Below are positions 1,678-47,477 of a DNA stretch of 64,000 nucleotides, piece after piece. Under the pieces are notes generated by a model. That model searched no databases. It was not told the DNA's origin and was given only the letters and a program-made list of their open reading frames with translations. Made by a program: the position numbers and the translations under genes. Each line of letters begins with the position of its first letter. Positions within the stretch are counted from its first letter, which is position 1. The DNA comes from Heterodontus francisci (taxonomy: Eukaryota), in contig NC_090380.1 in NCBI RefSeq assembly GCF_036365525.1, positions 60,478,712-60,542,711 of the forward strand, written 5' to 3'.

Positions 1678-2634
1678 ATGGCAGGAGAGCTCAAAGCCGT
1701 GTTGTGCTCTTTGTGTTCTATGTGGGAAGCCAGGAACAATTCCAGTGCCCAGGACCAGCATGTGTGCAGGAAGTGTCTCCAGCTGCAGCTCCTGGAAGCC
1801 AGGGTTTCGGAGCTGCAGCGGCAGCTGGGGACACTGTGGAGCATCCACGAGGCAGAGAGTATCATGGATAGCATGTATAAAGAGGTAGTCACACCGCAGG
1901 CTCAGACCCCACAGCCAGGAAGGGAATGGGTGACCACCAGGCAGAGCAAGAGGACGAGGCAGGCAGTGCAGGAATCTCCTATGGCTATTCCCCTGCAAAA
2001 CAGATATACTGCTTTGGATACTGTTGTGGGGAATTGCCTCTCAGGGGAAAGCAGCAGCAGCAACAGCCCAACTCATTGCACCATGGTTGACTCTGCTGCA
2101 CAGGGGAGGATTAAAAAGTGTGGGAATGCAATAGTTATAGGGGATTCAATTGTGAGGGGAATAGATAGGTGTTTCTGTGGTCACAAAAGAGACACCAGGA
2201 TGGTATGTTGCCTCCCTGGAGCTAAGGTCAAGGATGTCTTGGAGCAGTTACAGGACATTCAGAAGGGGGAGGGTGAACAGCCAGTGGTTGTGGTACACAT
2301 TGGTTCAAACAACATAGGTCAAAAAAAGGATGCGGTCCTAAAAGCAGAATATAAGGAGCTAGGAAGTAAGTTGAAAAGCAAGAACTCAAAGGTAGTGATC
2401 TCAGGATTACTACCAGTGCCACGTGCTAGTCAGAGTAGAAGTAGCAGGATATATCGGATGAATACGTGGCTGAAGAGATGGTGTGAGGGGGAGGGTTTTA
2501 GATTCCTGGGACACTGGGAACGGATCTGGGGGAGGTGGGACCAATACAAACTGGACAGGTTACACCTGGGCAGGACCGAGACTGATGTCCTAGGGGGAGT
2601 ATTTGCTAGAGTGGTTGGGGAAGGTTTAAACTAA
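1678..2634 (+). CDS. CR1 ORF1p: zinc finger/coiled coil + SGNH esterase domain
   Basis: CxxC..CxxC (CSLC/CRKC), leucine heptads, SGNH blocks GDSIVRG, LPGAKV, HIGSNN, DRLH; 318 aa uninterrupted. Confidence 0.9.
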   Translation: MAGELKAVLCSLCSMWEARNNSSAQDQHVCRKCLQLQLLEARVSELQRQLGTLWSIHEAESIMDSMYKEVVTPQAQTPQPGREWVTTRQSKRTRQAVQESPMAIPLQNRYTALDTVVGNCLSGESSSSNSPTHCTMVDSAAQGRIKKCGNAIVIGDSIVRGIDRCFCGHKRDTRMVCCLPGAKVKDVLEQLQDIQKGEGEQPVVVVHIGSNNIGQKKDAVLKAEYKELGSKLKSKNSKVVISGLLPVPRASQSRSSRIYRMNTWLKRWCEGEGFRFLGHWERIWGRWDQYKLDRLHLGRTETDVLGGVFARVVGEGLN

Positions 2635-2635
2635 A

Positions 2636-11611: not shown

Positions 11612-12834
11612 ATTTTTCTTTATTCGTTCATGGGATGTGGGCGTCAATGGCGAGGCCAGCATTTATTACTCATCCCTAATTGCCCTTGAGAAGATGGTGG
11701 TGAGCTGCCTTCTTAAACCACTGCAGTCCATGTGGGGTAGGTACACCCACAGTGCTGTTAGGAAGGGAGTTCCAGGATTTTGACCCAGAGGCAGTGAAGG
11801 AACAGCGATGTAGTTCCAAGTCAGGATGGTGTGTCACTTGAAGGGGAACTTGCAGGTGGTGATGTTCCCATGCATTTGCTGCCCTTGTCCTTCTAGTTGG
11901 TAGAGATCATGGGTTTGGAAGGTGCTGTCGAAGGAGCCTTGGTGCGTTACTGCAGTGCATCTTGTAGATGGTACACACTTCTGTCACTGTGCGTCGGTGG
12001 TGGAGGGAGTGAATGTTTGTGTATGGGGTGCCAATCAAGTGGGCTGTTTTGTCCTGGATGGTGTCGAGCTTCTTGATTTTTGTTGGAGCTAAACCCATCC
12101 AGGCAAGTGGAGAGTATTCCATCACACTCCTGAATTGTGCCTTGTAGGTGGTGGACAGGCTTTGGAGAGTCAGGAGATGAGTTACTCGCATCAGGATTCC
12201 TAGCCTCTGACCTGTTCTTCTAGCCACGGTATTTATATGGCTACTCCAGTTCAGTTTCTGGTCAATGGTAGCCCCTAGGATGTTGATAGTGGGGGATTCA
12301 GCGATGTTAATGGTATTGAATGTCAAGGGGAGATGGTTAGATTTTCTCTTGTTGGAGATGGTCATTGCCTGGCACTTGTGTGCGGCAATGATACTTGCCA
12401 CTTATCAACCCAAGCCTGGATATTTTCCAGGTCTTGCTGCATTTCTATACGGACTGCTTCAGTATCTGAGGGGTCACGAATGATGCTGAACATTGTGCAA
12501 TCATCAGCGAACATCCCCACTTCTGACCTTATGATTGAAGGAAGGTCATTGATGAAGCAGCTGAAGATGGTTGGGCCTAGGACACTACCCTGAGGAACTC
12601 CTGCAGTGATGTCCTGGAACTCAGATGGTTGACCTCCAACAACCACAACCATCTTCCTTTGCATTAGGTATGACTCCAACCAGCAGAGAGTTTTCCCCCG
12701 ATTCCCATTGACTCCAGTTTTGCTAGGGGTCCTTGATGCCATACTCGGTCAAATGTTCCCTTGATGTCAAGGGCAGTCACTCTCACCTCACCTCTTGAGT
12801 TCAGCTCTTTTGTCCATGTTTGAACCAAGGCTGT
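11612..12834 (-). mobile_element. LINE-B (CR1-group non-LTR element, distinct from canonical CR1), 3' ~1.2 kb
   Basis: [43 protein letters not shown]; 3' end ..CCCACATCCCATGAACGAATAA. Confidence 0.9.
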
Positions 12835-15800
12835 GAGTAAAGTAATAAAATAATTAACTAAGTAGAGATGGCTGGGCAGGTGATGTGCTGTAGCTGTATG
12901 ATGTGGGAGCTGGCTGACCCCATTGTGAACGGCAGGGACCACATCTGCAGCAAGTGTTGGTTGCTGGAAGAACTCCGGCTCAGAACTGATGATCTGGAAT
13001 CTGAGCTTCAAACACTGCGGCACATCCAGGAGGGGGAGAGTTACCTGGACGTTTTGTTTCAGGAGGCAGTCACACCTGGTAGATTAAGTAATTCAAATTC
13101 AGTTAGTGATCAGGGACAACAGGGTGTGATTGCAAGTGAGGCAGGTAGGGGGATCCTGAGTTTAGGAGTGGAGGAGCCTCAGCCTTTGACCTTATCCAAC
13201 AGCTATGAGATACTTGCTCCCTGTGTGGATGAGGAAAAGGGCTGCGGGGAGGATGAGCCAACTGACCATGGCACCATGGTACAGAAGGCCATTCAAGAGG
13301 GGGGAGCAAAAAGACAAGTGGTAGTTATAGGAGATTCTATAATTAGGGGGATAGATAGTATCCTTTACAAGCTGGATCGGGAGTCCCGCATGGTGTGTTG
13401 CCTGCCCGGTGCCAGGGTGCAGGACATCTCTGATCGGCTTGAAAGGATATTGGAGCGGGAGGGGGAGGAGCCAGTTGTTGTGGTCCACGTTGGGACTAAC
13501 AACATAGGCAAGGCTAAGATGGAGGACCTGTTTGGGGATTATAAAGCACTAGGAACGAAATTAAGGAACAGGTCCTCGAGGGTCATAATCTCCGGATTAC
13601 TGCCCGAGCCACGTGCAAATTGGCTTAGGGATAAGAATATTAGGGAAGTAAACATGTGGCTAAGGGAGTGGTGTGGGAAAGAGGGGTTCCATTTCATGGG
13701 GCATTGGCATCAGTTTTGGAACGGGGGGATCTGTATCGATGGGACGGTCTCCACCTGAACCGATCTGGAACCAGTGTTCTAGCGAAACGGATAAATAGGG
13801 TGGTCTCTAGGACTTTAAACTAGTGACTCGGGGGGAAGGGAAAGGGAAAACGAAAGGGAGTATGATGGTAAATAAAAAGGTAAGCAGCAGGTTAACATGT
13901 GTGCAGGAGGGTTTAAGTTCAAGGCAGACTATGAAAGAAGCAGAAAGGAAGGATAACTCAGGAGTTATTATTACAGATGTTGGAAATCATGAGGGTAAGA
14001 AAGCTAGCATAAAGGCACTTTACCTGAATGCTCGAAGCATTCGTAACAAGGTTGATGAGTTAACGGCACAAATCATCGCGAACGAATATGATTTGGTAGC
14101 CATTACGGAGACATGGTTACAGGTTGGTCACGACTGGGAGTTAAATATCCAGGGGTACCAGACTATTCGGAAGGACAGACAGGAAGGTAAGGGAGGTGGT
14201 GTAGCTCTGATATTCAAGGACGACATCAGGGCGGTGCTGAGAGATGATATAGGTTCTATGGAGAATGAAGTTGAATCCATTTGGGTGGAAATTAGAAACT
14301 CTAAGAAGAAAAAGTCATTGATAGGCGTAGTTTATAGGCCACCAAATAATATCACATTGGGGCGGACAATAAACAAAGAAATAACTAATGCCTGTAAAAA
14401 TGGTACGGCAATTATCATGGGGGATTTTAATCTACATGTAGATTGGTCGAACCAGCTCAGTCAAAGTAGCCTTGAGGAGGAGTATGGTTGAATTTAGAAT
14501 ACAGATGGAGAGTGTGAAGATAAAGTCCAATACCAGGGTCCTGCGCTTGAACAAGGGGGACTACAATAGAATGAGGGAGGACTTGGCTAAACAAAGATTT
14601 TATGGTGGGACAGTTGACGAGCAGTGGAGGACTTTCAAAGCAATTTTTCAAAGTGCTCAGCAAAAGTATATTCCAGTGAAAAGGAAGGACTGGAAGAAAA
14701 GGGATAATCTGCCATGGGTGTCTAAGGAAATAAGGGAGGCTATCAAATTGAAAGAGAAGGCATACAAAGTGGCCAAAAACAGCATGAAACTAGAAGATTG
14801 GGAAAACTTTAAAGGTCAACAGAAAGCCACAAAAAGAGCTATAAAGAAAAGTAAGATAGAACATGAGAAAAAACTAGCGCAGAATATAAAGACAGATAGC
14901 AAAAGTTTCTATAAATATATAAAACAAAAAAGAGTGGCTAAAGTAAACGTTGGTCCTTTAGAGGATGAGAAGGGGAATTTAGTTATGGGATATGATGAAA
15001 TGGCCGAGGCATTGAACAGGTATTTTGTATCGGTCTTCACAGTGGAGGACATTAATAACATGCCAGTAATTGACAAAGAGACGAACGTAGGTGAGGACCT
15101 GGAAACAATCATTATTACGGAAGAGGTAGTGTTGGGCAAGCTAATGGAGCTAAGGATTGATAAGTCTCCTGGCCCTGATGGAATGCATCCCAGGGTACTA
15201 AAAGAGATGGCGGGAGAAATAGCAGGTGCACTGGCGGTAATTTTCCAAAATTCGCTGGACTCTGGGGTAGTCCCAGCAGATTGGAAAACAGCAAATGTGA
15301 CGCCACTGTTTAAAAAGGGAGGTAGACAAAAGATGGGGAATTATAAACCGGTTAGCTTAACCTCTGTAGTGGGGAAGATGCTTGAGTCTATTATCAAGGA
15401 AGAAATAGCAGGGCATCTCGATAGAAATTGTCCCGTTGGGCAGACGCAGCATGGGTTCATGAAGGGCAGGTCATGCTTGACAAATCTTTTGGAATTCTAT
15501 GATGACATTACGAGCAAGGTGGACAATGGGGACCCAGTGGATGTGGTGTACCTAGATTTCCAAAAGGCCTTCGACAAGGTGCCGCACAAGAGGCGGCTGC
15601 ATAAGATAAGGATGCATGGCGTTAGGGGTAAAGTATTAGCATGGATAGAGGATTGGTTGACTAACAGGAAGCAGAGAGTGGGGATAAATGAGTGCTATTC
15701 TGGTTGACAATCAGTCACGAGTGGTGTGCCTCAGGGATCGGTGTTGGGACCGCAATTATTTACAATTTATATAGATGATTTGGAGTTGGGGACCACGTGT

Positions 15801-19130: not shown

Positions 19131-22100
19131 TTGAATTTATGTTGCTTTCTAACATGATACCATTATAGGCTATAATTCTGATGTAGAAGTTTAGATACCT
19201 CAAAGCTGTACATAAATCTGAAACTTAAACCATATTTACCAGTTGAACCTCCTCCTGCAATAAACGGAATAAACCATTTGGAAAGAAATATAATAGTCCT
19301 GATTCGTGATAACATATCAGGAGCAGATCGCAAAACCAAACTGTCCTCCCATCATAAATGTCCATTCCAGCAATTAATTACTTCTTTTCCAGAGAACTGT
19401 CCAATGTCAGTCCTAAATTTGATTTTTGCAATTTGAACTATGCCCATTTGTCTTACCGTTATGGTGTCTTTTGAAGTATACCAACTTTACCTTTTCCTCC
19501 ATGAGGTCCCCTTTTAAAACTGAATTTTTCTTCAACGATTATTCATAACTCAGGCTTCTGATGCTATGTGACAATCTCATGGCCCTTTGCACTACTTCCA
19601 GCATTTGAAAGTCTTCTTGGTATCACAGTAATCAGATTTGGACGTAGTACCTAGGTCGAGTCAGACCACCAAAACGTTTTAGTGTGATATCTTACTTCCC
19701 AGTTTTGACACATAGTTCAACATTTTATTGCTTTATAAAGCTCTGTAGTGGCCTGACACACCTTCACCATTATTTTCATACCATTCACCGACTATGTACT
19801 TCGCCCATTCTTTTCACTAACTGATTTTATTTTTATTCATTCATGGGATGTGGCCATCACTGGCTATGCCAGCATTTATTGCCTATCCCTAATTGCCCTT
19901 GAGAAGGTGGTGGTGAGCTGCCTTCTTGAATTGCTGCAGTCCATGTGAGGTAGGTACACCCACAGTGCTGTTAGGAAGGGAGTTCCAGGATTTTGACCCA
20001 GCAACAGTGAAGGAACGGCAATATAGTTCCAAGTCAGGATGGTGTGTGACTTGGATGGGAACTTGCAGGTGGTGATGTTCCCATGGATCTGCTGCTCTTG
20101 TCCTTCGAGGTGTTAGAGGTCATGGGTTTGGAAGGTGCTGTCGAAGGAGCCTTGGTGCGTTGCTGCAGTTCATCTTGTAGATGGTACACACTGTTGCCAC
20201 TGTGCATCAGTGGTGGAAGGAGTGAATGTTTGTGGATGGTGTGCCAATCAAGCGGGCTGCTTTGTCCTGGATGGTGTCAAGCTTCTTGAGTGTTGTTGGA
20301 GCTGCACCCATCCAGGCAAGTGGAGAGTATTCCATCACACTCCTGAATTGTGCCTTGTAGATGGTGGATAGGCTTTGGAGAGTCAGGAGGTGAGTTACTC
20401 ACCTCAGGATTCCTAGCCTCTGACCTGCTCTTGCAGCCACGATATTTATATGGCTACTCCAGTTCAGTTTCTGGTCAATGGTAGCCCCCAGGATGTTGAC
20501 AGTGGGGGATTCAGCAATGGTAATGCCATTGAATGTCAAGGGGAGATGGTTAGATTCTCTCTTGTTGGAAATGGTCACTGCCTGGCACTTGTGTGGCGCA
20601 AATGTTACTTGCCACTTATCAGCCCAAGCCTGGATATTGTCCAGGTCTTGCTGCATTTTTACATGGACTGCTTCAGTATTTGAGGCGTCGCGAATGGTGC
20701 TGAACATTGTGCAATCATCAGCGAACATCCCCACTTCTGACCTTATGATTGAAGGAAGGTCATTGATGAAGCAGCTGAAGATGGTTGGGCCTAGGACACT
20801 ACCCTGAGGAACTCCTGCAGTGATGTCCTGAAGCTCAGATGATTGACCTCCAACCACCACAGCCATCTTCCTTTGCATTAGGTATGACTCTAACCAGCAG
20901 AGAGTTTTCCCCCTGATTCCCATTGACTCCAGTTTTGCTAGGGTTCCTTGATGCCATACTCAGTCAAATGCTGCCTTGATGTCAAGAGCAGTCACTCTCA
21001 CCTCACCTCTTGAGTTCAGCTCTTTTGTCCATGTTTGAACCAAGGTCAGGTGCTGAGTGGCCCTGTCGAAACCCAAACTGGGTATCACTGAGCAGGTTAT
21101 TGCTGAGCAAGTGCTGCTTGATGGCACTGTTGATGACACCTTCCATCACTTTGCTGATGATTGAGAGTAGACTGATGGGGGTGGTAATTGGCCAGATTGG
21201 ACGTGTCCTGCTTTTTGTGTACAGGACATACCTGGGCAGTTTTCCACAATGCCGCGTAAATGCCAATGTTGTAGCTGTACTGAAACAGCCTGGCTAGGGG
21301 TGCGGCAAATTCTGGAGCACAGGTCTTCAGTACTATTGTCGGAATATTGTCAGGACCCATAGCCTTTGCAGTATCCAGTGTCTTCAGTCGTTTCTTGATA
21401 TCACGCAGAGTGAATCGAATTGGCTGAAGTCTGGCATTTGTGATGCTGGGAACTTCAGGAGGGGGCCGAGATGGATCATCAACTTGGCACTTCTGGCTGA
21501 AGATTGTTACAAATGCTTCAGCCTTATCTTTCGCACTGATGTGCTCAGCTCCCCCATCATTGAGGATGGGGATATTTGTGGAGCCACGTCCTCCAGTTAG
21601 TTGTTTAATTGTCCACCACCATTCACGGCTGGATGTGGCAGGATGGCAGGGCTTAGATCTGATCCATTGGTTATGGGATTGCTTAGCTCTGTCTATTGCA
21701 TGCTGCTTATGCAGTTTGGCATGCAAGTAGTCCTGGGTTCTGGCTTCACCAGGTTGACACCTCATTTTGAGGCATTCCTGGTGCTGCTCCTGGCATGCCC
21801 TCCTGAACTCTTCATTGAACCAGATTTGTTCTCCTGGCTTAATGGTAATGGTAGAGTGGGGGATATGCTGGGCCATGAGGTACAGATTGTGGTTGAGTAC
21901 AATTCTGCTGCTGATGGCCCACAGCGCCTCATAAATGCCCAGTTTTGCATTGCTAGATCTGTTCGAAATCTATCCCATTTAGCACGGTGATAGTGCCACA
22001 CAACACGCTGGATGGTATCTTCAATGTGAAGGCGGGACTTCGTCTCCACAAGGACTGTGCGGTGGCCACTCCTACTAATACAGTCATGGGCAGATGCATC

Positions 22101-22855
22101 TGCTGCAGGCAGATTGGTGAGGACAACCACCTGCCACAGACCCAGTCTAGCGGCTATGTCCTTTAGTGCTCGGTCAGTATTGGTGCTACCGAGCCACTCT
22201 TGGTGATGGACATTGAAGTCCCCCACCCAGAGTACATTTTGTGCTCTTGCCACCCTCAGTGCTTCCTCCAAGTGGTGTTCAACATGGAGGAGTACTGACT
22301 CATCAGCTGAGAGAGGGCGGTAGGTGGTAATCAGTAGGAGGTTACCTTTCCCATGTTTGACCTGATGCCATGAGGCTTCATGGGGTCCGGAGTTGATGTT
22401 GAGAACTCCCAGGGCAACTCCCTCCCTACTGTAGGCCATTGTCCCGCCACTTCTGCTGGGTATGTCCTGTCCCACCCAGGGATAGTGATTGCAGTGTCTG
22501 GGACATTGTCTGTAAGGTATGATTCTGTGAGTTTGACTATGTCACGCTGTTGCTTGACTCGTCTGTGGGACAGCTCTCCCAAGCTGGTACAAGCCCCCAG
22601 ATGTTAGTAAAGAGGACTTTTCAGGGTCGACAGGACTGGGTTTGCCGTTGTCCTTTCTGGTGCCTAAGTCGATGCCGGGTGGTCCGTCCCGTTTCATTCC
22701 TTTTTATTGACTTCATAGCGGTTAGGTACAACTGAGTGGCTTGCTAGGCCATTTCAGAGGGCCATTTAAGAATTAACCACATTGCTGTGGATCTGGAGTC
22801 ACATGTAGGCTAGACCAGGTAAGGACAGCAGATTTCCTTCCCTAAAGGACATTAG

Positions 22856-25411
22856 AATTAGAATTAGAACATTACAGCGCAGTACAGGCCCTTCGGCCCT
22901 CGATGTTGCGCCGACCTGTGAAACCATCTGACCTACACTATTCCATTTTCATCCATATGTCTATCCAATGACCACTTAAATGCCCTTAAAGTTGGCGAAT
23001 CTACTACTGCTGTAGGCAGGGCGTTCCACGCCCTTACTACTCTCTGAGTAAAGAAACTACCTCTCACATCTGTCCTATATCTATCACCCCTCAACTTGAA
23101 GCTATGTCCCCTCGTGTTTGCCATCACCATCCGAGGAAAAAGACGCTCACTATCCACCCTATCTAACCCTCTGATTATCTTATATGTCTCTATTAAGTCA
23201 CCTCTCCTCCTCCTTCTCTCCAACGAAAACAACCTCAAGTCCCTCAGCCTTTCCTCGTAAGACCTTCCCTCCATACCAGGCAACATCCTAGTAAATCTCC
23301 TCTGCACCCTTTCCATAGCTTCCACATCCTTCCTATAATGCGGTGACCAGAACTGCACGCAATACTCCAGGTGCGGTCTCACCAGAGTTTTGTACAGCTG
23401 CAGCATGACCTCGTGGCTCCGAAACTCGACCCCCCTACTAATAAAAGCTAACACACCATATGCCTTCTTAACAGCCCTATTAACCTGGTTAGAAACCTTC
23501 AGGGATTTATGCACCTGGACACCAAGATCTCTCTGTTCATCTACACTACCAAGAATCTTCCCATTAGCCCAGTACTCTGCATTCCTGTTACTCCTTCCAA
23601 AGTGAATCACCTCACACTTTTCCGCATTAAACTCCATTTGCCATCTCTCACCCCAGCTCTGCAGCCTATCTATGTCCCTCTGTACCCTACAACATCCTTC
23701 GGCACTATCCACAACTCCACCGACCTTAGTGTCATCTGCAAATTTACTAACCCACCCTTCTACACCCTCTTCCAGGTCATTTATAAAAATGACAAACAGC
23801 AGTGGCCCCAAAACAGATCCTTGCGGTACAACACTAGTAACTAAACTCCAGGATGAACATTTGCCATCAACCACCACCCTCTGTCTTCTTTCAGCTAGCC
23901 AATTTCTGATCCAAAGCTCGAAATCACCTTCAACCCCATACTTCCGTATTTTCTGCAATAGCCTACAGTGGGGAACCTTATCAAACGCCTTACTGAAATC
24001 CATATACACCACATCCACTGCTTTACCCTCATCCACCTGTTTGGTCACCTTCTCGAAAAACTCAATAAGGTTTGTGAGGCACGACCTACCCTTCACAAAA
24101 CCGTGCTGACTATCTCTAATGAACTTATTCTTTTCAAGATGATTATAAATTCTGTCTCTTATAACCTTTTCCAACATTTTACCCACAACCGAAGTAAGGC
24201 TCACAGGTCTATAATTACCAGGGCTGTCTCTACTCCCCTTCTTGAACAAGGGGACAACATTTGCTATCCTCCAGTCTTCCGGCACTATTCCTGTCGACAA
24301 TGACGACATAAAGATCAAGGACAAAGGCTCTGCAATCTCCTCCCTAGCTTCCCAGAGAATCCTAGGATAAATCCCATCTGGCCCAGGGGACTTATCTATT
24401 TTCACACTTTCCAAAATTGATAACACCTCCTCCTTGTGAACCTCAATCCCATCTAGCCTCGTAGCCTGAATCTCAGTATTCTCAACAACATTTTCTTTCT
24501 CTACTGTAAATACTGACGCAAAATATTCATTTAACACTTCCCCTATCTCCTCTGATTCCACACACAACTTCCCACTACTATCCTTGATTGGCCCTAATCT
24601 AACTCTAGTCATTCTTTTATTCCTGATATACCTATAGAAAGCCTTAGGGTTTTCCCTGATCCGATCCACCAATGACTTCTCGTGTCCTTTCCTTGCTCTT
24701 CTTAGCTCTCCCTTTAGATCCTTCCTGGCTAGCTTGTAGCTCTCAAGCGCCCTAACTGAGCCTTCACGTCTCATCCTAACATAAGCCGCCTTCTTCCTCT
24801 TGACAAGCGCTTCAACTTCTTTAGTAAACCACGGCTCCCTCGCACGACAACTTCCTCCCTGCCTCACAGGTACATACTTATCAAGGACACACAGTAGCTG
24901 CTCCTTGAATAAGCTCCACATTTCGATTGTTCCCATCCCCTGCAGTTTCCTTCCCCATCCTACGCATCCTAAATCTTGCCTAATTGCATCATAATTTCCT
25001 TTCCCCCAGCTATAATTCTTGCCCTGCGGTATATACCTGTCCCTGCCCATCGCTAAGGTAAACCTAACCGAATTGTGATCACTATCACCAAAGTGCTCAC
25101 CTACATCTAAATCTAACACCTGGCCGGGTTCATTACCCAGTACCAAATCCAATGTGGCATCGCCCCTGGTTAGCCTGTCTACATACTGTGTCAGAAAACC
25201 CTCCTGCACACACTGGACAAAAACTGACCCATCTAAAGTACTTGGAAAGTACTAAAGTCGATATTTGGAAAGTTAAAGTCCCCCATAACAACTACCCTGT
25301 TACTCTCGCCCCTGTCGAGAATCATCTTCGCTATACTTTCCTCTGCATCTCTGGAACTATTCGGAGGTCTATAAAAGACTCCCAACAGGGTAACGTCACC
25401 TCTCCTGTTTC
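22856..25411 (-). mobile_element. Young 5'-truncated CR1 LINE inserted in the 5' UTR of LINE-B
   Basis: Tail (TTCTAA)n; 3-bp duplication TAG at 22853-22855 and 25412-25414; the host sequence GGACATTAG/TGAACCAG rejoins. Confidence 0.92.
22933..25209 (-). CDS. CR1 ORF2, uninterrupted 758 aa (end of APE, complete RT and C-terminus; the listed start is not a true ATG)
   Basis: [65 protein letters not shown] all in one frame. Confidence 0.9.
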   Translation of the reverse strand: MQEGFLTQYVDRLTRGDATLDLVLGNEPGQVLDLDVGEHFGDSDHNSVRFTLAMGRDRYIPQGKNYSWGKGNYDAIRQDLGCVGWGRKLQGMGTIEMWSLFKEQLLCVLDKYVPVRQGGSCRAREPWFTKEVEALVKRKKAAYVRMRREGSVRALESYKLARKDLKGELRRARKGHEKSLVDRIRENPKAFYRYIRNKRMTRVRLGPIKDSSGKLCVESEEIGEVLNEYFASVFTVEKENVVENTEIQATRLDGIEVHKEEVLSILESVKIDKSPGPDGIYPRILWEAREEIAEPLSLIFMSSLSTGIVPEDWRIANVVPLFKKGSRDSPGNYRPVSLTSVVGKMLEKVIRDRIYNHLEKNKFIRDSQHGFVKGRSCLTNLIEFFEKVTKQVDEGKAVDVVYMDFSKAFDKVPHCRLLQKIRKYGVEGDFELWIRNWLAERRQRVVVDGKCSSWSLVTSVVPQGSVLGPLLFVIFINDLEEGVEGWVSKFADDTKVGGVVDSAEGCCRVQRDIDRLQSWGERWQMEFNAEKCEVIHFGRSNRNAEYWANGKILGSVDEQRDLGVQVHKSLKVSNQVNRAVKKAYGVLAFISRGVEFRSHEVMLQLYKTLVRPHLEYCVQFWSPHYRKDVEAMERVQRRFTRMLPGMEGRSYEERLRDLRLFSLERRRRRGDLIETYKIIRGLDRVDSERLFPRMVMANTRGHSFKLRGDRYRTDVRGSFFTQRVVRAWNALPTAVVDSPTLRAFKWSLDRHMDENGIV

Positions 25412-25509
25412 TAGTGAACCAGATGGGTTTTTACAACAATAGACAATGGTTTCATGGCCATCATTAGACTAGCTTTTTAATTCCACATTTATTAATTAAA
25501 TTCAAACTT

Positions 25510-25605
25510 CTGCTGTGGTGGGATTCGAACTCATGTCCCCAGATCAATATCCTGGGTCTCTGGGTTACTAGTCCAGTGATAATACCACTAGGCCACCGCC
25601 TCCCC
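25510..25605 (-). promoter_or_regulatory. tRNA-derived type 2 Pol III promoter at the 5' end of LINE-B
   Basis: A box TGGCCTAGTGG (25595-25585), B box GTTCGAATC (25530-25522), anticodon-like arm CTGGA-CTAGTAA-CCCAG, long variable-arm stem CCCAG..CTGGG (tRNA-Ser-like layout). Confidence 0.85.
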
Positions 25606-25937
25606 AACTATCTATACTGTGCTTCATCTGCCACTGGTTCTATCACTTAGAAAAAGAAATAACTCCATTTATGCATACCTCTGAATGGCTGTGAAGCACT
25701 GTAAGGCAATAAAGTACTTTTCAAATGTAGTCACTGTTGTAATGTCGGAAAATGTGGCAGAGAATTTGCATACCATAACGTCCTAAATTTCCTTTGTTCA
25801 TTAAAGCATAGACAAATGCTGTACATAAATAACGGACAAAAAACTGATTTAAACAATGCAGTGAATGCCAAATGTGCATTACAAATATGCCTCAACAGAG
25901 CTTTCAAGACAGGGTGTAAGACATAACATTTTATCCT

Positions 25938-28808: not shown

Positions 28809-31313
28809 TTTTTTTTATTCATTCATGGGATGTGAGCATAATTATTGAGGCCATTATTCATTGTCCATCCCTAATTGCCCTTGAGAAGGTGGTGGTGAGC
28901 TGCATTCTTGAACCACTGCAGTCCATGTGGTGTAGGTACACCACCGGTGCTGTTATGGAAGGAGTTCCAGGATTTTGACCCAGTGACAGTGAAGGAACAG
29001 TGATAGAGTTCCAAGTCAGGATGGTATGTGGCTTGGAGGGGAACTTGCAGATGGTGGTGTTTCCATGCATCTGCTGCACTTGTTCTTTTGGTGGTAAAGG
29101 TCACAGGTGTGGAAGGGACTTTCAAAAGTGCCTTCGTGAGCTGCTGAAGTGCATCTTGTAGCAGGTGCACATTGTGCACCAGTGGTGGATAGTGTCTTGT
29201 TCAAGCATCCTGCTTTATCCTGGATGACATTGAGCTTCGTGAGTGTGATTGGAGCTGCACTCATCCAGGCAAGTGGAGAGTACTCCATCGCACTTCTAAC
29301 TTGTGCGTTGTAGATGGTGGATAGGCTTTGGGAAGTCAGGGGGTGAGTTACTTGCCGCAGAATTCGCAGCCTCTAACTTGATCTAATAGCCAAGTATTTA
29401 TATGGCTACTCCAGTTAAGTTTCTGGTCAATGGTAACCCCCAGGATGTTGATGGTAGGAGATTCAGTGTTGGTAATGTTATTGAATGTTATGAGGAAATG
29501 GTTAGATTATCTCTTGTTGAAGATGGTCATTGCCTGGCAACCACAACCATCTTCCTTTGCGCTAGGTATGACTCCAACCAGTGGAGAGTTTTCCCCCTGA
29601 TTCCCATTGATTTCAGTTTTGCTAGGGTTCCTTGATTCCACACTTGGTCAAATGCTGCTTTGATGTCCAAGGCAATCACTCTCACCTCACCTCTGGAATT
29701 CAGCTCTTTTGTCCATATTTGGACCAAGGCTGTAATGAAGTTTGGAGCCAAGTGGCCCTGGTGGAACCCAAACTGAACATCAGTAAGCAGGTTATTGCTG
29801 AGTAGGTGCTGCTTGATAGCACTGTCAATGACACCTTTCATCACTTTTCTGATGATTGAGAGCATACTGACTGATGGAAGAATAATTGGCCAGATTAGAT
29901 TTGTCCTGCTTTTTACGGACAGGGCATAGCTGGGCAATTTTCCATACTGCCAGGTAGATGCCAGTGTTGTAACTATACAGGAACAACTTTGCTAGGGGCC
30001 ACCTAGCTCTAGAGCACAGGTCTTCAGTACTATTGCCGGAATATTGTCAAGGCCATAGCTTTTGCTACATCCAATGCCTTCAGCTGTTTCTTGGTATTAA
30101 GTGGGGGAGTGAACCAAATTGGCTGAAGATTGGCATCTGAGATGCTGGGGTCCTCAGGAGGAGGCCAACTTGTATCATCCAAATAGTACTTCTGGCTGAA
30201 GATGGCTGCAAATGTTTCAGCCTTGTCTTTTGCACCAACCTGCTGGGCTCCCCATCATTGAGGCTGGGGATATTTGTGGACCATCCTCCCCCAGTTAGTT
30301 GTTTAATTATTAACTACCACCATTCATGGCTGGATGTGGTAGTACTGCAGCATTTTGGTCTGGTGCATTGGATGTTGGATTGCTTCACTCTGTCTATCGC
30401 AAGTTGCTTCCGTTGTTTAGCATGAACATAGCCCTGTGTTGTAGCTTCACCATCTTGGCCTCTCATTTTAAGGTATGCCTGGGGCAGCTCCTGACATGCT
30501 CTCCTGGACTCCTCATTGAACCAGGGTTGATTCCCAGGCTTGATGATAATGGTAGAGTGAGGGATATGCCAGGCCATGGGGTTACAGATTGTGGTTGAAT
30601 ATAATTCTGCTGCTACTGATGGTCCACAGCAACTCATGGAAGCCTGGCTTTGAGCTGCTAGACCTGTCCTGAATATTCCATTTAGTATGGTGGTAGTGCC
30701 ACACCGCACAGAGGATACCTTCCAATGTGTTAAGACAGGACTTCGGCTCCACACGGACTGTGCGGTGCTCACTCCTACCAATACTGTCATGGACATGCAT
30801 CAGCAACAGGTAGATTGGTGAGGATGAGATAAAGAAGGTTTTCCCCTCTTCTTGGTTCTTTCACCACCTGCTGCAGGTCCAATCTGGCAGTTATGTCTTC
30901 AGGCCTCAGTCAGATTGGCCAGTAGTGGTGCTATCGAGCCACTCTTGGTGATGCACATTGTAGTCCCCCACCCAGAGTATATTCTGTGCCCTTGCTACCC
31001 TCAGTGCTTCTTCTAAATGGTGTCCAACAGGGAGGAGCACTGATTCATCAGCTGAGGGAGGGCAGTAGGTGGTAATCAGCAGGAGGTTTTCTTCATGTTT
31101 GATCTGATACCAGGAGACTTCATGAGATTCGGAGTCAATGTTGAGGACTCCCAGGGCCTCTCCCTCCCAACTGTATACCACTGTGCCACTAGTTCTGGTG
31201 GGTCTGTCCTGCTGGTGGGACAAGACATACCCAGAGATGGTGATGGAGTAAACCACATTGCTGTGGTTCTGGAGTCACATGTAGGCCAGACTGGGTAAGG
31301 ACAGCAGATTTCC
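28809..31313 (-). mobile_element. Older LINE-B copy (APE+RT, internal deletions) retaining part of the SINE-like 5' UTR
   Basis: WVGDYNVHHQEWL, QFGFHQGH, MEYSPLAW; 31251-31313 matches the 5' UTR body at 22776-22836. Confidence 0.85.
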
Positions 31314-32180: not shown

Positions 32181-33233
32181 ATTTTTTTTATATTCATTCT
32201 GGGGATGTGGGTGTCGCTGGCTATGGCTGCATTTCTCGCCCATCCTGAATTGCCCTTGAAAAGGTGGTGGTGAGCTGCATTCTTGAACTGCTGCAGTCCT
32301 TGGGGTGTAGGTACACCAACAGTGCTGTTAGGAAGGAAGTTCCAGGATTTTGACCCAGCAACAGTGAATGGCGATCTAGTTCCAAGTAAGGATGGTGTCT
32401 GGCTTGGAGGGGAACTTGCAGGTGGTGGTGTTCCCATGCATCTGCTGCCCTGGTCCTTCTAAATGGGAGAGGTTGCAGGTTTAGAAGATGCTATCTAAGG
32501 TGCCTTGGTGAGTTTCTGTAGCGCACCTTGTAGATGGTACACACTGCCGCCACTGCGTGTCAGCAGTGGCGGGAGTGAATGTTGAAGTGGTGGATGGGGT
32601 GCCCATCAAGCGGGTTGCTTTATCCTGGATGATGTCGAGCTTCTTGAGTGTTGTTGGAGCTGCACCCATCCAGGCAAGTGGAGACTTTTCCATCATACTC
32701 GTGACTTGTGCCTTGTAGGCGGTGGACAGACTTCTGGGAGGTGATTTACTCACCGCAGAATTCCCAGCCTCTGACCTGCTCTTGGAGCCACAGCATTTAT
32801 GAAGCTGGCCCAGTTCAGTTTCTGGTCAATGGTGTCCCCCAGGATGTTGATAGTGTGGGATTTAGCGATGGTAATGCTATTGAACATCAACGAGAGATGG
32901 TTAGATTCTCTCTTGTTTGAGATAGTAATTGCCTGGCACTTGTGTGGCACGAATGTTACTTGCCTCTTATCAGCCCAAGCCTGGATGTTGTCCAGCTCTT
33001 GCTGCATTTGGACACAGGCTGCTTCAGTATCTGAGGAGCCGCAAATGGTGCTGAACATTGTGCAAATCATCAGAAAACATCCGCACTTCTGATCTTATGA
33101 TGGAGGGACGGTCATTGATGAAGCAGCTGATGATGAATGGGCCTAGGACACTACCCTGAGGAACTCTTGCAGTAATGTCCTGGGCTAAGATGATTGACCT
33201 CCAACCGCCACAACCAACTTCCTTTGTGCTAGG
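32181..33233 (-). mobile_element. LINE-B 3' fragment
   Basis: [27 protein letters not shown]; same 3' end as the other copies. Confidence 0.85.
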
Positions 33234-33879: not shown

Positions 33880-35062
33880 AAGGATTTAGAACAAAAATGT
33901 GAGGATATTCACTTCGGTAGGAGGAACAGATGTGCTTAGTGTTTCTTAAACGGTAAGAGATTAGAAAGTGTAAATGTACAAAGGGTGTTCTCTTCAATAA
34001 GTCACTGAAAGCTAACATGTAGGTGCAGCAAGCAATTAGGAAGGCTAATGGTATATTACCCTTTATCACAAGGGAGAGGATTTGAGTACAGGAGTAGCGA
34101 AGTCTTGTTTACAATTATATGTCACTGGACTAGTAACCCAGAGACCCAGGTATTGCTCTGGGGACATGGATTCGAATCCCACCACAGCAGAAGGTGGAAT
34201 TTGAATTCCATTAATAAATCTGGAATTTAAAAAGCTAGTCTAATGATGGCCATGAAACCATTGTCGATTGTTGTAAAAGCCCATCTGGTTCACTAATGTC
34301 CTTTAGGGAAGGAAATCTGCTGTCCTTACCTGGCCTGGCCTACATTTGACTCCAGATCCACTGCAATGTGGTTGTCTCTTACAGTCCCTTGAAATGGCCT
34401 AGCAAGCCACTCAGTTCAAGGGAAAATAGGGATGGGCAATAAATGCTGGCCTGGCCTGCGCTGCCCACATCCCATGAATGAATTTTTAAAAAAGAACCTT
34501 GGTTAGACCACACCTGGAGTACTGTGTGCAGTTTTGGTCCCCTGACCTCAGGAAGGATATTATTGCCATAAAGGGAATGTAACCAAGATTCACCAGACTT
34601 GTTCCCGGGATGGCGGGAATGTCCTATGACGAGAGATTGGGGAAACTGGGCCAGTATTCTCTCGAGTTTCAAAGAATGAGAGATGATCTCATTGAAACCT
34701 GCAAAATGCTTAAAGGGATAGACAGGGTTGATGCAGGTAAGATGTTTGCCCTGTTTGGGGAATCTAGAACCAGGGGACACAATTTCAAAATAAGGAGGAA
34801 GTCACTTAGGACAGAGATGAGGAGAAATTTCTTTACTCTGAGGGTTGTTAATCTTTGGAATTCTCTACCCCAGAGGACTGTGGAAGCTCAGTCATAGAGT
34901 ATGCTTAAAGCAGAGATTGACATATTTCTAAATACCAATGACATAAAGGGATGTGGGGATAATGTGGGAAGAAGACATTGAAGTGGATGATCAGCCATGA
35001 TCGTATTGAATGGCAGAGCAGGTTCGATGGGCTGAAATGGTCTACTCCTGTTCCTATGTTCC
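33880..35062 (+). mobile_element. CR1 3' fragment carrying a LINE-B-derived SINE
   Basis: LEFQRMRDDLIETCK..RVVNLWNSLP; tail CCTGTTCCTATGTTCCT. Confidence 0.88.
34119..34493 (+). mobile_element. SINE composed of the LINE-B 5' end joined to the LINE-B 3' end
   Basis: 34119-34416 matches the reverse complement of 25580-25412 + 22852-22730; 34417-34493 matches the LINE-B 3' terminus (~19901-19830). Confidence 0.9.
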
Positions 35063-44414: not shown

Positions 44415-44771
44415 TATGGTGACGTAATGCTTATGATATTGGACTAATGTTCCAGACAACGAGTTCAAATCCCACTATGGCAATTTGAGAATTTGGATTC
44501 AGTTTAAATAAAAGGCTGGTGTAATTAAAAGTGACCATCTCAAGTTGTTGGATTATTCGAGAAACCCCAACTGGTACAGTAATGTCCCTTCAGGAAGCAA
44601 ACCTGCTGTCCTTACCCGGTCGCCGGTATGTGACTCCAGTCCACGCCAATGTGGTTGACTCTCAACTGGCTTGCTAGCAGACGGCATTCGGTTGTATCAA
44701 ATGGCGACATGAATTGCAACTCCTTCTCCGGGCAACTAAGGAGCCACCTTTCCCATGATATTAAACAAAAA
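44415..44771 (+). mobile_element. Old LINE-B-related tRNA SINE (intron 2)
   Basis: GAGTTCAAATCCC B box, body TAATGTCCCTTCAGGAAG..GTCCTTACC..GTGACTCCAG..AATGTGGTTGACTC, degenerate LINE-B tail. Confidence 0.7.
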
Positions 44772-46108
44772 TAATTGGTTTCAGCAAGCAGAAACCAAAT
44801 GTTGTGGGCATCTGCATGGGCCTCTGGTGTTCCTGCTATCATTTTATGAGTGGCTGCTCCAATGCCAACAAGTTCTCCTTTTTCTAACTTTGTGAGAGGG
44901 AAATGTGCTGATGATTCTGCCAGGTATGTTTGCGTTATCACTGCGTCCTGTTTTGGACGGCTAACATTTGTGCACTGCTTTCTCACATAAGCTGCTTTGC
45001 TTCTTAGATTTAATAAGGTACTAGTACTATTAAATATGTCTGCACAGTGGTCTGCCTTAATGAATTCACATGTTTAATTAGAGGTTGCTGATGCCTGTGC
45101 AAGACCTGTGCAGGAGGAACCAGCAGCACAAGCACCCTGTTAATTGTAATATAAAAGCATCATTATACTTGGGCATTGGCTGCAATTTTATAAGGTGATT
45201 CGCCAACAGCAAACATTATGGGTTGAATTCCCCAATTCTCTGTTATCCCGACTTAATCATAATCCATATTTTCATTGTTTGTTTCTTGGAACTAGGGGTT
45301 GTTTGCACTATAGAGTATATCTCATGGGTGAAAACCCATGCAACTGCAGTCGGCTACACTCCGATAGTGTAGAGTTTTTATGGCCTGACTAAAGTGACGG
45401 TTGCGGTTTATCAGATTATTGTGCATGAAGTTCAAATAGATCAGGATACTGTCAGATTTGCGCATTAACCAAGCAGCTGATGCCGAACATATCTGCAAGT
45501 TCTTTTTATATTTCACATTTGCAGCTCTGGCAGCTATAGTTATTTTACTCAGTCCACTTTTTCAAAATGGCAAACGTTTGGTAAGTACAAATACAGTTCC
45601 ATTTATATTGCTAAAAACATGTCTAGTCCATCTGATTAATCTCCTCAGTGAGTGTACAGTCCTGGAGATTTCATTGCTCTGTGGATCAATTGCCAAATCT
45701 GATAGGATTTGTCCATCGAAAAACAACAATCATGACAGAGGGCCAACCAATGGGAATTGACTGGTTAGCAATAAAAACATTTTGGCTGCAAGAAACCCTC
45801 AAAATCATCACTTGCCACTGGCCTCAGCTGCTGCTGATCTTCCTAACAATCTTCTACAGGACTGTGCTCACCTCCTCAGTAGCCTTACTCAGCTTCCACT
45901 TGCTGCCCAGTCTTCAGATTTTCTCCACTGGTCTTGACCTATGAGCAAAACCATGGGAGATCAACTAACCATCATTAAAAATGCAAATTACCTACACTTC
46001 AAGATATCTTGTACATCTGATAGTAGCCTAATTCACAAAAATATGTATCTGTAACAAGATGTCCATCCATGTTTATTATTGATTCCTTATAACCATTGTC
46101 ACTTTCAG

Positions 46109-46990: not shown

Positions 46991-47142
46991 GTAAGTGAAG
47001 ACGAAGTAAAAATATATAGGTAAATTATTAAGAGAGCAAAAAAATGGATTCCATGCTAAGTAAAAATTAGAGACAAAAAGTTTATTGAAAATAAAACATT
47101 AATTAAACTCTTTTTTTAAAAATCTGTAATTTCAAAAAAGTA

Positions 47143-47477
47143 AGCTAGTATCAGTAAAATAAATTAAAGCAGTCAGATTGTCGCAACAACCCAACTAGTT
47201 CACTAATGCCCTTTAGTGAATCACAGAATTGTTACAGCACAGAAGGAAGCCATTCAGGCCATTGTGTCTGCCTGCTGTCCTTACCTGGTCTCTATGAACT
47301 CTAGTACCACACCAATGTTAGCTGCCCTCTGAAGTCATCTAGCAAGCCATTCAGTTTTATCAAGCTACTATGTGGTTCAAGAAGAAGGCCCACCATCACC
47401 TTCTCCGGGTAACTAGAGATGGGTAATAAATGTTGGCCTTGCTAGCAATATCCACATCCAAGAATTAATTAAAAAAC
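47143..47477 (+). mobile_element. LINE-B-related SINE with a longer 3' LINE segment (intron 4)
   Basis: Body ..CTAGCAAGCCATTCAGTT followed by GTGGTTCAAGAAG..CACCATCACCTTCTC..AATAAATGTTGGCC. Confidence 0.7.

What the first reader, a model, noticed from the sequence alone, without database searches (positions are those of the whole stretch)
19824..25605. Candidate Pol III-transcribed, protein-coding LINE: tRNA head, no ORF1, no TTTT terminator in ~3.2 kb
Seen in sequence: removing the nested CR1 (22856-25411) leaves a contiguous minus-strand element. It runs tRNA-like head (A box TGGCCTAGTGG, B box GTTCGAATC), ~330-nt 5' UTR in total, ATG 22716 in frame with the APE N-terminus, RT, 3' tail, leaving no room for ORF1. 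A manual scan found no AAAA on + (no TTTT on the sense strand) over the whole element, although about 15 runs of exactly three occur. About 5 runs would be expected at my rough estimate of ~21% sense-strand T. The co-oriented CR1 nested inside has about 12 such runs in 2.55 kb. Copy 11612-12834 also has none, and the three runs in older copies (~29124, ~32259, ~33074) lie at positions where other copies lack them. Established: T4 or longer runs terminate vertebrate Pol III, and LINEs normally use Pol II promoters. Inference: this autonomous LINE uses a captured tRNA promoter, its ORF is under selection against Pol III terminators, and it would need cap-independent translation. I cannot tell whether this is already described.
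Basis: partly seen in the sequence, partly recalled or inferred. Interest (0 to 1): 0.92.

Follow-up and report, generated by a model that had tools for sequence, protein, structure and literature searches.

The report
Shark LINE with a tRNA-type SINE head
A dead 3.2-kb copy of a protein-coding shark jumping gene (a LINE) begins with the tRNA-like promoter module normally seen only on short SINEs and has no TTTT stop signal for RNA polymerase III, so it may be copied by that polymerase; transcription was not tested.

Summary
With the nested CR1 removed (really 22853-25411), the minus strand carries one collinear 3,238-nt unit. It runs tRNA-derived head with intact A and B boxes, about 330 nt of leader, a degraded endonuclease-RT reading frame, and a 65-nt tail. 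There is no room for ORF1.

The sense strand has no T4 run and 15 T3 runs. Synonymous-codon shuffling expects 3.2 T4 runs (P=0.024) and dinucleotide shuffling expects 2.8 (P=0.037). A, C and G runs are as expected. Eight CR1-type ORFs in the same window show no depletion (26 observed, 25 expected).

The SINE at 34122-34483 is this element's first 335 nt joined to its last 75 nt. Older SINEs keep more of the LINE at both ends, so the SINEs are internal-deletion derivatives.

Two corrections. ATG 22716 is not in frame in this copy. The copy has five frameshifts and four in-frame TGA stops.

That full-length copies normally carry the head therefore rests on earlier scan notes. The scan found this before on other DNA of this genome, with three follow-ups reading it the same way.

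Pol III transcription is an inference. I found no prior description in the searchable literature.

The parts
25511..25605 (-). tRNA-derived head of the unit. A box is at 25585-25595 and B box at 25522-25530, 65 nt apart start to start. The A box begins at element position 11.
   Evidence: Sequence and motif positions. Shared at 94% with the SINE at 34122-34189. Not called a tRNA by ARAGORN or Rfam. No cloverleaf fold.
25412..25510 (-). 5' UTR, first part. It equals the first part of the SINE body.
   Evidence: Collinear with SINE 34190-34290.
22853..25411 (-). Nested, 5'-truncated CR1 in the same orientation. It has an open 758-aa ORF (22933-25209) and an (ATTCTA)n 3' end. It is a later insertion and not part of the unit.
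   Evidence: Junctions. The most frequent joint, 22852->25412, stands in contigs of four species. ORF. It carries 12 T4+ runs.
22730..22852 (-). 5' UTR, second part. It equals the second part of the SINE body. The young SINE leaves the LINE sequence after 22730.
   Evidence: The SINE-type joint 19901->22730 appears in all four runs.
22698..22729 (-). LINE leader not present in the young SINE but kept through 'CTATG' in the older SINEs. It contains ATG 22714-22716, which is out of frame in this copy.
   Evidence: Alignment A1, sequences, positions.
19889..22697 (-). Degraded single ORF of about 936 codons: apurinic-type endonuclease, reverse transcriptase and a C-terminal WNSLP..FK motif. It reads in six frame blocks with four in-frame TGA stops. 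The stop codon TAG is at 19889-19891. It has no T4+ run.
   Evidence: Translations. Pfam PF14529 and PF00078. T-run tests. dN/dS.
19824..19888 (-). 3' UTR tail with a predicted hairpin carrying AATAAA in its loop region. It ends in ...CCCATGAATGAATAAA plus an A-rich run. From 19901 downstream the sequence is shared with the SINE.
   Evidence: Tails of all copies, fold, BLAST.
34122..34483 (+). Young partner SINE, 5'-truncated. It equals element positions 42-335 joined directly to positions 3163-3230, that is, the LINE minus its ORF.
44415..44775 (+). Older, diverged SINE with head, body and the LINE leader (GGTTGTATCAA...).
47111..47474 (+). Older SINE, 5'-truncated. It keeps the LINE leader through CTATG and a longer LINE 3' piece (from about element position 3135), so its deletion junction differs.
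11613..12830 (-). 5'-truncated copy of the same LINE, 92% identical (element positions 2020-3239). It has no T4 run.
28809..31313 (-). Old copy of the LINE, 78-80% identical, with two internal deletions. A SINE-body piece (element positions 228-290, 91% identical) is joined to the middle of the endonuclease. It has one private T4 run at 29127.
32181..33226 (-). 5'-truncated copy of the LINE, 85% identical. It has two private T4 runs, at 32262 and 33077.

Best explanation
This is a dead, full-length copy of a single-ORF LINE of the CR1/L2 group that is very abundant in this shark. Its whole 5' UTR is the head plus body of its partner tRNA-derived SINE.

The most likely working model has four steps:
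1. TFIIIC binds the A and B boxes in the first 95 nt, and Pol III starts at or near the first base. The promoter is therefore internal and is copied to every full-length daughter.
2. The 3.2-kb unit has been purged of T4 runs, so Pol III can reach the 3' tail.
3. The LINE's own reverse transcriptase recognises the tail hairpin and copies the RNA.
4. Internal deletions that keep the promoter end and the tail give the SINE family.

Shown here: the collinear anatomy, the T-specific run depletion, the SINE-as-deletion-derivative relation, and purifying selection on the protein.

Inferred: that the head is the normal 5' end of the family, that Pol III actually transcribes it, and how the protein is translated from such an RNA.
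For: - The head has an A box that fits TRGCNNAGTGG exactly and a B box that fits the minimal consensus. The A box sits 10 nt from the element's first base.
- Head, body, leader, ORF and tail are collinear once the later CR1 insert is removed.
- The unit has 0 T4+ runs. Synonymous shuffling expects 3.17 (P=0.024); for T3+ runs it is 12 observed against 19.3 expected (P=0.004). A, C and G runs are as expected.
- Dinucleotide shuffling gives P=0.037. TT odds ratio is 0.80 here against 1.14 in the CR1.
- Eight CR1-type ORFs in the window carry 26 T4+ runs against 25.2 expected.
- T4 runs in older copies are private C>T changes.
- None of 13 well-supported majority differences in the species' contigs would create a sense TTTT.
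- The young SINE is element positions 42-335 plus 3163-3230. Older SINEs keep the LINE leader through the ATG and a longer 3' piece. Several deletion junctions appear as joints in four species.
- dN/dS falls from 0.74 to 0.35 with divergence.
- Unchecked leads: at least 16 first-reader notes and three follow-ups describe 3.1-3.3-kb headed copies elsewhere in this genome.
Against: - Only one copy in this window reaches the 5' end, so family-level regularity was not tested by me.
- T4 absence is only P 0.02-0.04 under shuffle nulls. The other fragments add no power, with 0.9-1.3 runs expected in each.
- The head is too degenerate for ARAGORN or Rfam and has no cloverleaf fold.
- No TSD brackets the unit.
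- Natural Pol III transcripts are short, and uncapped Pol III RNA is translated poorly (my own knowledge).
- There is no expression, ChIP or inhibitor evidence.
- The tail carries AATAAA and A-rich ends, which would also suit a Pol II, polyadenylated transcript.
Confidence: 0.45

Rival explanations
1. The head is a regular part of the family's 5' UTR, but the coding, retrotransposing RNA is made by Pol II from the 5' UTR or from upstream host promoters. The head would be a passenger, or serve another role such as TFIIIC-bound open chromatin or RNA stability. The T-run paucity would come from composition, codon-pair bias or chance.
For: - The tail has a conserved AATAAA and A-rich ends in all LINE and SINE copies.
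- TT is generally under-represented in the ORF (rho 0.80). Allowing for that lowers the T4 expectation to 2.1-2.8 and raises P to 0.04-0.09.
- One of eight control ORFs also showed a T3+ deficit at P=0.005, so run statistics are noisy.
- All characterised LINEs use Pol II (my own knowledge).
Against: - The depletion is specific to T on the sense strand. It is absent for A, C and G runs and in CR1-type ORFs of equal T content.
- The A and B boxes are intact and correctly placed at the very 5' end.
Confidence: 0.25
2. Headed LINE copies are chimeras. The real LINE RNA starts inside the shared 5' UTR/body. During reverse transcription the enzyme switches, within about 120-300 nt of homology, to an abundant SINE RNA and so adds the head. 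This could be recurrent, and the headed form would not be the master.
For: - SINE and LINE share the body or leader over at least element positions 228-351, which offers homology for switching.
- Only one headed copy could be examined.
- The old copy at 31313 shows no significant head upstream.
- Template-switch chimeras of LINEs with small RNAs are well known (my own knowledge; discussed in PMC5786205 and PMC4494074).
Against: - Scan notes report many 3.1-3.3-kb headed copies, one TSD-bounded, and one follow-up says the LINE 'always' starts with the head. These are unchecked.
- Chimerism would not explain T-run purging of the ORF.
Confidence: 0.12
3. The headed 3.2-kb form is a 'long SINE'. 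Pol III transcribes it and head-less autonomous relatives mobilise it in trans through the shared tail. Its ORF need not be translated from that RNA.
For: - T4-free sequence is required for any full-length Pol III product, whether or not it codes.
- LINEs of this stringent type mobilise tail-bearing RNAs in trans, as the SINEs show.
- This model avoids the problem of translating uncapped RNA.
Against: - dN/dS of 0.35 between diverged subfamilies shows long-term protein constraint in the lineage.
- No head-less full-length form was seen, although only one full-length copy was available.
Confidence: 0.13
4. The tRNA-like head is an RNA-processing signal. RNase P would cut at its 5' side and release a precise element RNA from read-through host transcripts, as ribozymes do for R2.
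For: The head sits exactly at the 5' end, and other LINEs are known to use 5' self-cleaving ribozymes (my own knowledge).
Against: - The head does not fold as a tRNA (z = -0.25; not called by ARAGORN or Rfam).
- This model does not explain T-run depletion.
Confidence: 0.05

Closest known systems
SINE bodies derived from LINE 5' UTRs; bipartite LINE derivatives (Kojima 2018, PMC5786205; Bov-A/Bov-tA/Bov-B, Okada and Hamada 1997 as cited there)
   Same: The SINE equals a small-RNA head plus the LINE 5' UTR plus the LINE 3' tail. Internal-deletion derivatives occur with several junctions.
   Different: In that model the head is added to a head-less bipartite LINE, and only the RTE and Vingi clades were found to contribute. 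Here the coding LINE itself carries the head. It also looks like a CR1/L2-group element (WNSLP..FK C-terminus, PF14529 endonuclease), though I did not assign its clade rigorously.
SINEU and Tx1 LINEs with U1/U2 snRNA-derived 5' ends (Kojima 2015, PMC4494074)
   Same: A LINE/SINE system whose mobile units begin with a piece of a small-RNA gene.
   Different: snRNA genes have no internal promoter, and SINEU elements contain oligo-T, which that paper takes to exclude Pol III. Here the head carries internal A and B boxes and the unit lacks T4.
Stringent SINE/LINE tail partnerships in fishes and sharks (HE1/HER1, UnaSINE1/UnaL2; table in PMC3747384)
   Same: A tRNA-derived SINE and a CR1/L2-type LINE share a 3' tail that the LINE enzyme recognises.
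   Different: Those pairs are described as sharing the tail only. Here the 5' 335 nt, including the promoter head, are shared too. I could not establish identity with HE1/HER1 because those sequences are not held.
LINE-small RNA chimeric retrocopies made by template switching (U6-L1 type; my own knowledge)
   Same: A small Pol III RNA sequence fused 5' to LINE sequence.
   Different: Those are one-off insertions with variable junctions. Here the junction lies in sequence shared with old SINEs, and scan notes report many equal-length copies.
RIME/ingi and NARTc/L1Tc non-autonomous deletion derivatives (cited in PMC5786205)
   Same: The short element equals the 5' end plus the 3' end of the autonomous LINE.
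   Different: Those have no Pol III-type head.

Membership tests
Non-LTR retrotransposon (LINE), CR1/L2 group | Apurinic-type endonuclease followed by reverse transcriptase in one ORF | tested here: met
   PF14529 (E=3e-6) and PF00078 (E=3e-19) in consecutive frame blocks. The nearest full-length relatives are 935-990 aa.
Non-LTR retrotransposon (LINE), CR1/L2 group | C-terminal domain with the WN.LP ... FK motif, and a short 3' UTR hairpin with a short-repeat or A-rich end instead of a long poly(A) | tested here: met
   The C-terminus reads RSFTVAGSKSWNSLP...LQQFKK, parallel to the nested CR1's RAWNALP...RAFK. Tails are and the fold. No clade tree was built because no labelled references were available.
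Non-LTR retrotransposon (LINE), CR1/L2 group | Copies mostly 5'-truncated, with a lineage under purifying selection | tested here: met
   Four of five copies in the window are truncated. Contig depth is biased towards the 3' end. dN/dS falls to 0.35.
Non-LTR retrotransposon (LINE), CR1/L2 group | Pol II transcription from an internal 5' UTR promoter | not testable with these tools
   I obtained no RNA data.
tRNA-derived SINE (SINE2) | 5' head derived from a tRNA, with A and B boxes | tested here: met
   A box TGGCCTAGTGG and B box GTTCGAATC are 65 nt apart. The head is 94% identical to the SINE head. It is not recognised as a tRNA by ARAGORN or Rfam.
tRNA-derived SINE (SINE2) | Short (under about 600 nt) and non-coding | tested here: not met
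   The unit is 3,238 nt and carries an EN-RT ORF.
tRNA-derived SINE (SINE2) | No internal Pol III terminator (T4 or longer) within the unit | tested here: met
   0 T4+ runs in the whole unit.
One-off template-switch chimera | A unique junction not shared by other copies or related elements | tested here: inconclusive
   The head-body-leader order is shared with old SINEs.
Pol III-transcribed gene (type 2 promoter) | Occupancy by TFIIIC, TFIIIB and Pol III; 5'-triphosphate transcripts; resistance to low-dose alpha-amanitin | not testable with these tools
   These are experimental tests only.

The most novel reading that the evidence does not exclude
This shark LINE family would be the first autonomous, protein-coding retrotransposon driven by its own internal tRNA-type Pol III promoter. 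Its 2.8-kb ORF would be kept free of oligo-T terminators, and its partner SINE would be nothing more than the same element with the ORF deleted. That would give a one-step origin for a SINE family and require translation of a Pol III-made RNA.
Probability: 0.38. Interest if true: 0.9.

Novelty: new variant of a known kind. Interest (0 to 1): 0.75.

Why it matters
LINEs must carry their promoter inside the transcript, and all characterised ones do so with Pol II promoters. SINEs solve the same problem with Pol III promoters borrowed from small-RNA genes.

A coding LINE that uses the SINE solution would do three things:
- It would blur the line between autonomous and parasitic elements.
- It would show how a SINE can arise from its LINE by a single deletion. 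This extends Kojima's 'LINE 5' UTR becomes SINE body' idea beyond the RTE and Vingi clades.
- It would give a natural test case for long-range Pol III transcription, and for translation of Pol III-made RNA, in a vertebrate.

If the head turns out to be a passenger, the finding is still a clear example of a LINE and SINE sharing both ends.

Tried and rejected
- **Fetching other genomic copies.** Exact-pattern scans for LINE-leader 20- and 21-mers found nothing in metagenome contigs or genome contigs. Protein-based scans of viral contigs and genome contigs found no relatives.
- **Read laying.** Read laying on 19824-25620 in four species was saturated by hundreds of thousands of repeat contigs. 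It listed no contig bridging head to ORF. It gave only joints, a depth gradient and majority differences.
- **TSD search.** There is no shared word of 6 nt or more between the flanks.
- **tRNA identity of the head.** ARAGORN and Rfam are negative, and the fold is no better than shuffles.
- **Head upstream of the old copy at 31313.** The alignment score equals that of shuffles.
- **T4 tests on the four other fragments.** These were not informative, with 0.9-1.3 runs expected in each.
- **LINE inserted into a SINE.** Rejected, because no SINE tail follows the LINE's 3' end.
- **SINE inserted upstream of a LINE.** Rejected, because the SINE-like part has no tail of its own and runs on collinearly with old SINEs into the LINE leader.
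- **RTE-clade membership.** Considered because of the 3.2-kb single-ORF layout. The C-terminal WNSLP motif and the PF14529 endonuclease point to CR1/L2 instead, but this is not proven.
- **Literature.** Searches found no description of a tRNA-headed or Pol III-driven LINE. The V-SINE paper (PMC155270) is not held. Repbase and Dfam could not be searched.
Full report
**Anatomy.**
On the minus strand, 25605-19824 is one retroelement interrupted by a later insertion. The parts in order are:
- a 95-nt tRNA-derived head (25605-25511), with an A box that fits TRGCNNAGTGG exactly (25595-25585) and a B box GTTCGAATC (25530-25522);
- about 235 nt of further leader (25510-25412 and 22852-22730);
- a 32-nt LINE-specific leader;
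- a degraded ORF of about 936 codons (22697-19889);
- a 65-nt tail (19888-19824).

The interruption is a 5'-truncated CR1 in the same orientation, with an open 758-aa ORF. Its true limits are 22853-25411. The SINE copy in the window reads straight across the site. The commonest contig joint in four species is 22852->25412. A 3-nt CTA is duplicated or ambiguous.

Pfam finds an endonuclease (PF14529) and a reverse transcriptase (PF00078) in consecutive frame blocks. The C-terminus carries the WNSLP...FK motif, which the nested CR1 also has. I therefore place the element in the CR1/L2 group. I had no labelled references for a clade tree.

- Head, boxes, leader length and absence of ORF1 are correct. 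The leader is SINE-homologous almost up to the start codon, so nothing else fits.
- Zero sense-strand T4+ runs and exactly 15 T3 runs: correct.
- Twelve T4+ runs in the nested CR1: correct.
- Copy 11613-12830 has none: correct.
- The three T4 runs in older copies (29127, 32262, 33077) are private C>T changes where every other copy has C: correct.
- Wrong in detail: ATG 22716 is 19 nt upstream of ATG 22697, which opens the N-terminal block, so it is out of frame here.
- The copy is dead, with six frame blocks and four in-frame TGA stops. Many contigs of the same species differ from this copy by small indels within about 10 nt of three of its frame-shift points. This fits those lesions being private.
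- ARAGORN and Rfam do not recognise the head as a tRNA. Its fold is no better than shuffles. 'tRNA-derived' therefore rests on the boxes, the T-arm remnant and its identity with the SINE head.
- No TSD of 6 nt or more flanks the unit. This is not unusual for this LINE group (my own knowledge).

**Is the T4 absence more than chance?**

| Null model | Expected T4+ | P (0 observed) |
|---|---|---|
| Base composition | about 5.5 | not computed |
| Dinucleotide shuffle, whole unit | 2.8 | 0.037 |
| Dinucleotide shuffle, LINE-only part | 2.1 | 0.09 |
| Synonymous-codon shuffle, ORF (within six frame blocks) | 3.17 | 0.024 |
| Rate in co-resident CR1-type ORFs with T of 0.20-0.23 (about 2.1 per kb) | about 5.8 | about 0.003 (Poisson) |

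- Under the synonymous shuffle, T3+ runs are 12 observed against 19.3 expected (P=0.004). A, C and G runs sit on their expectations.
- The same test on eight CR1-type ORFs in this window gives 26 T4+ observed against 25.2 expected.
- TT is under-represented on the sense strand, with rho 0.80 against 1.14 in the CR1.
- The four other fragments of the family add no power, with 0.9-1.3 runs expected in each.
- None of the 13 best-supported majority differences between this copy and the species' contigs would create a sense TTTT.

My reading is that there is a real, T-specific and family-specific depletion. From this window alone its statistical weight is moderate.

**Relation to the SINE.**
- The SINE at 34122-34483 equals element positions 42-335 joined directly to 3163-3230.
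- Two older, diverged SINEs (44415-44775 and 47111-47474) keep more of the LINE. The 47-kb copy also has a longer 3' piece, from about position 3135.
- The old LINE copy at 28809-31313 has a body fragment joined to the middle of the endonuclease.
- Contigs of four species show several distinct body-to-tail joints. The joint 19901->22730 is in all four. The joints 19898->22766 and 19898->22775 are in three. The joint 19968->22716 is in one.

The SINEs are therefore a series of internal-deletion derivatives of an RNA in which head, body, LINE leader and LINE tail were already contiguous.

**Family and distribution.**
- dN/dS between this copy and the others falls from 0.74 (92% identical pair) to 0.35 (78% identical pair). 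This is the pattern of an active LINE lineage under protein constraint, with neutral decay added after insertion.
- Protein fragments of the family are annotated in Heptranchias perlo, Heterodontus francisci and Rhincodon typus.
- Contig word depth over the LINE interior is roughly 3- to 80-fold higher, depending on the bin, in the window's species than in three others. The CR1 is comparable across species. Depth is not copy number.
- The nearest full-length relatives are single-ORF proteins of 935-990 aa at 28-40% identity, some on 3.6-3.8-kb contigs.

**What I could not do.**
The decisive structural test is whether full-length copies regularly begin with the head. No eukaryotic genome collection was available, and scans of the metagenome, prokaryote-genome and viral collections found nothing. 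Read laying was saturated.

The scan's own notebook holds at least 16 first-reader notes on 3.1-3.3-kb tRNA-headed LINE copies in other windows of this genome. One is described as TSD-bounded. Three follow-up reports reached the same reading, and one says the LINE 'always' starts with the head. I treat these as leads, not tests. They are the main reason I rate a one-off chimera as unlikely.

**Mechanism and rivals.**
- Best model (0.45): the head is an internal type-2 Pol III promoter that travels with the element. The T4-free body lets Pol III reach the tail. The LINE enzyme recognises the tail. Deletions give SINEs.
- Pol II with a passenger head (0.25). The conserved AATAAA in the tail and the A-rich ends fit this. 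They also fit AAUAAA-dependent polyadenylation of Pol III transcripts, which is known for some SINEs (my own knowledge).
- A trans-mobilised 'long SINE' (0.13).
- Recurrent template-switch chimeras through the shared leader (0.12).
- An RNase P processing signal (0.05), disfavoured by the lack of a tRNA fold.

Uncapped Pol III RNA is translated poorly, though functional mRNA made by Pol III has been reported (my own knowledge). This is the weakest link of the best model.

**Comparison with what is known.**
- Kojima 2018 (PMC5786205) showed that SINE bodies can come from LINE 5' UTRs. That was found only for RTE and Vingi, with the head added to a head-less bipartite LINE.
- Kojima 2015 (PMC4494074) described snRNA-headed SINEs and Tx1 LINEs. 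These lack internal promoters, and internal oligo-T was taken to exclude Pol III.
- Shark HE1/HER1 and other fish pairs are described as sharing tails only (PMC3747384).
- Five literature searches found no LINE with a tRNA-derived promoter head. Repbase and Dfam were not searchable.

I class it as a new variant of a known kind. It would become categorically new only if Pol III transcription of the coding unit is shown.

Noticed in passing
window 22853-25411 (-): The nested CR1 still has an open 758-aa ORF (22933-25209) and an (ATTCTA)n tail. It is therefore a young insertion, younger than the LINE copy it sits in. Its T4+ count (10 in the ORF) matches shuffles.
   Followed up: partly
window 28809-31313 (-): The old LINE copy has two internal deletions (element positions about 291-553 and 2210-2477). 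Its SINE-body fragment is 91% identical to the focal copy while its ORF is only 78% identical. This may mean stronger conservation of the leader, or recombination.
   Followed up: partly
window 19824-22733 compared with 22853-25411, contigs of four species: Contig word depth over the headed LINE is roughly 3- to 80-fold higher, depending on the bin, in the window's species than in three other species. CR1 depth is similar in all. This suggests a lineage-specific burst of this LINE, though depth is not copy number.
   Followed up: no
window 20962, 20401, 20209, 20122 (-): All four in-frame stops of the focal ORF are TGA. This would fit C>T decay of CGA codons at CpG; CpG odds ratio in the ORF is 0.26.
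   Followed up: no
tails at 19824-19888, 11613-11680, 28809-28880, 32181-32250 (-) and 34440-34500, 47430-47480 (+): Most copies keep AATAAA in the loop region of the tail hairpin (two old LINE copies have it mutated). All LINE copies and the SINE at 34 kb end in ...CATCCC(A/C)(T/A)GAA(T/C)GAAT plus a short A-rich run; the older SINE at 47 kb has a diverged version. The SINE at 34 kb has TTTTT just before its A run. This could be a polyadenylation and terminator arrangement like that of poly(A)-acquiring SINEs.
   Followed up: no
window 1678-2634 (+) and 12868-13758 (+): Two ORFs begin MAGE/MAGQ...C..C..W.. They lie upstream of CR1-type RT ORFs (for example 14472-15707) and are probably CR1 ORF1 proteins. 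The CR1 families here do have an ORF1, unlike the headed LINE.
   Followed up: no
window 47345-47356 (+): The old SINE at 47 kb has a private TTTT (CAGTTTTATC) where the LINE and the 44-kb SINE read GTTGTA.
   Followed up: no
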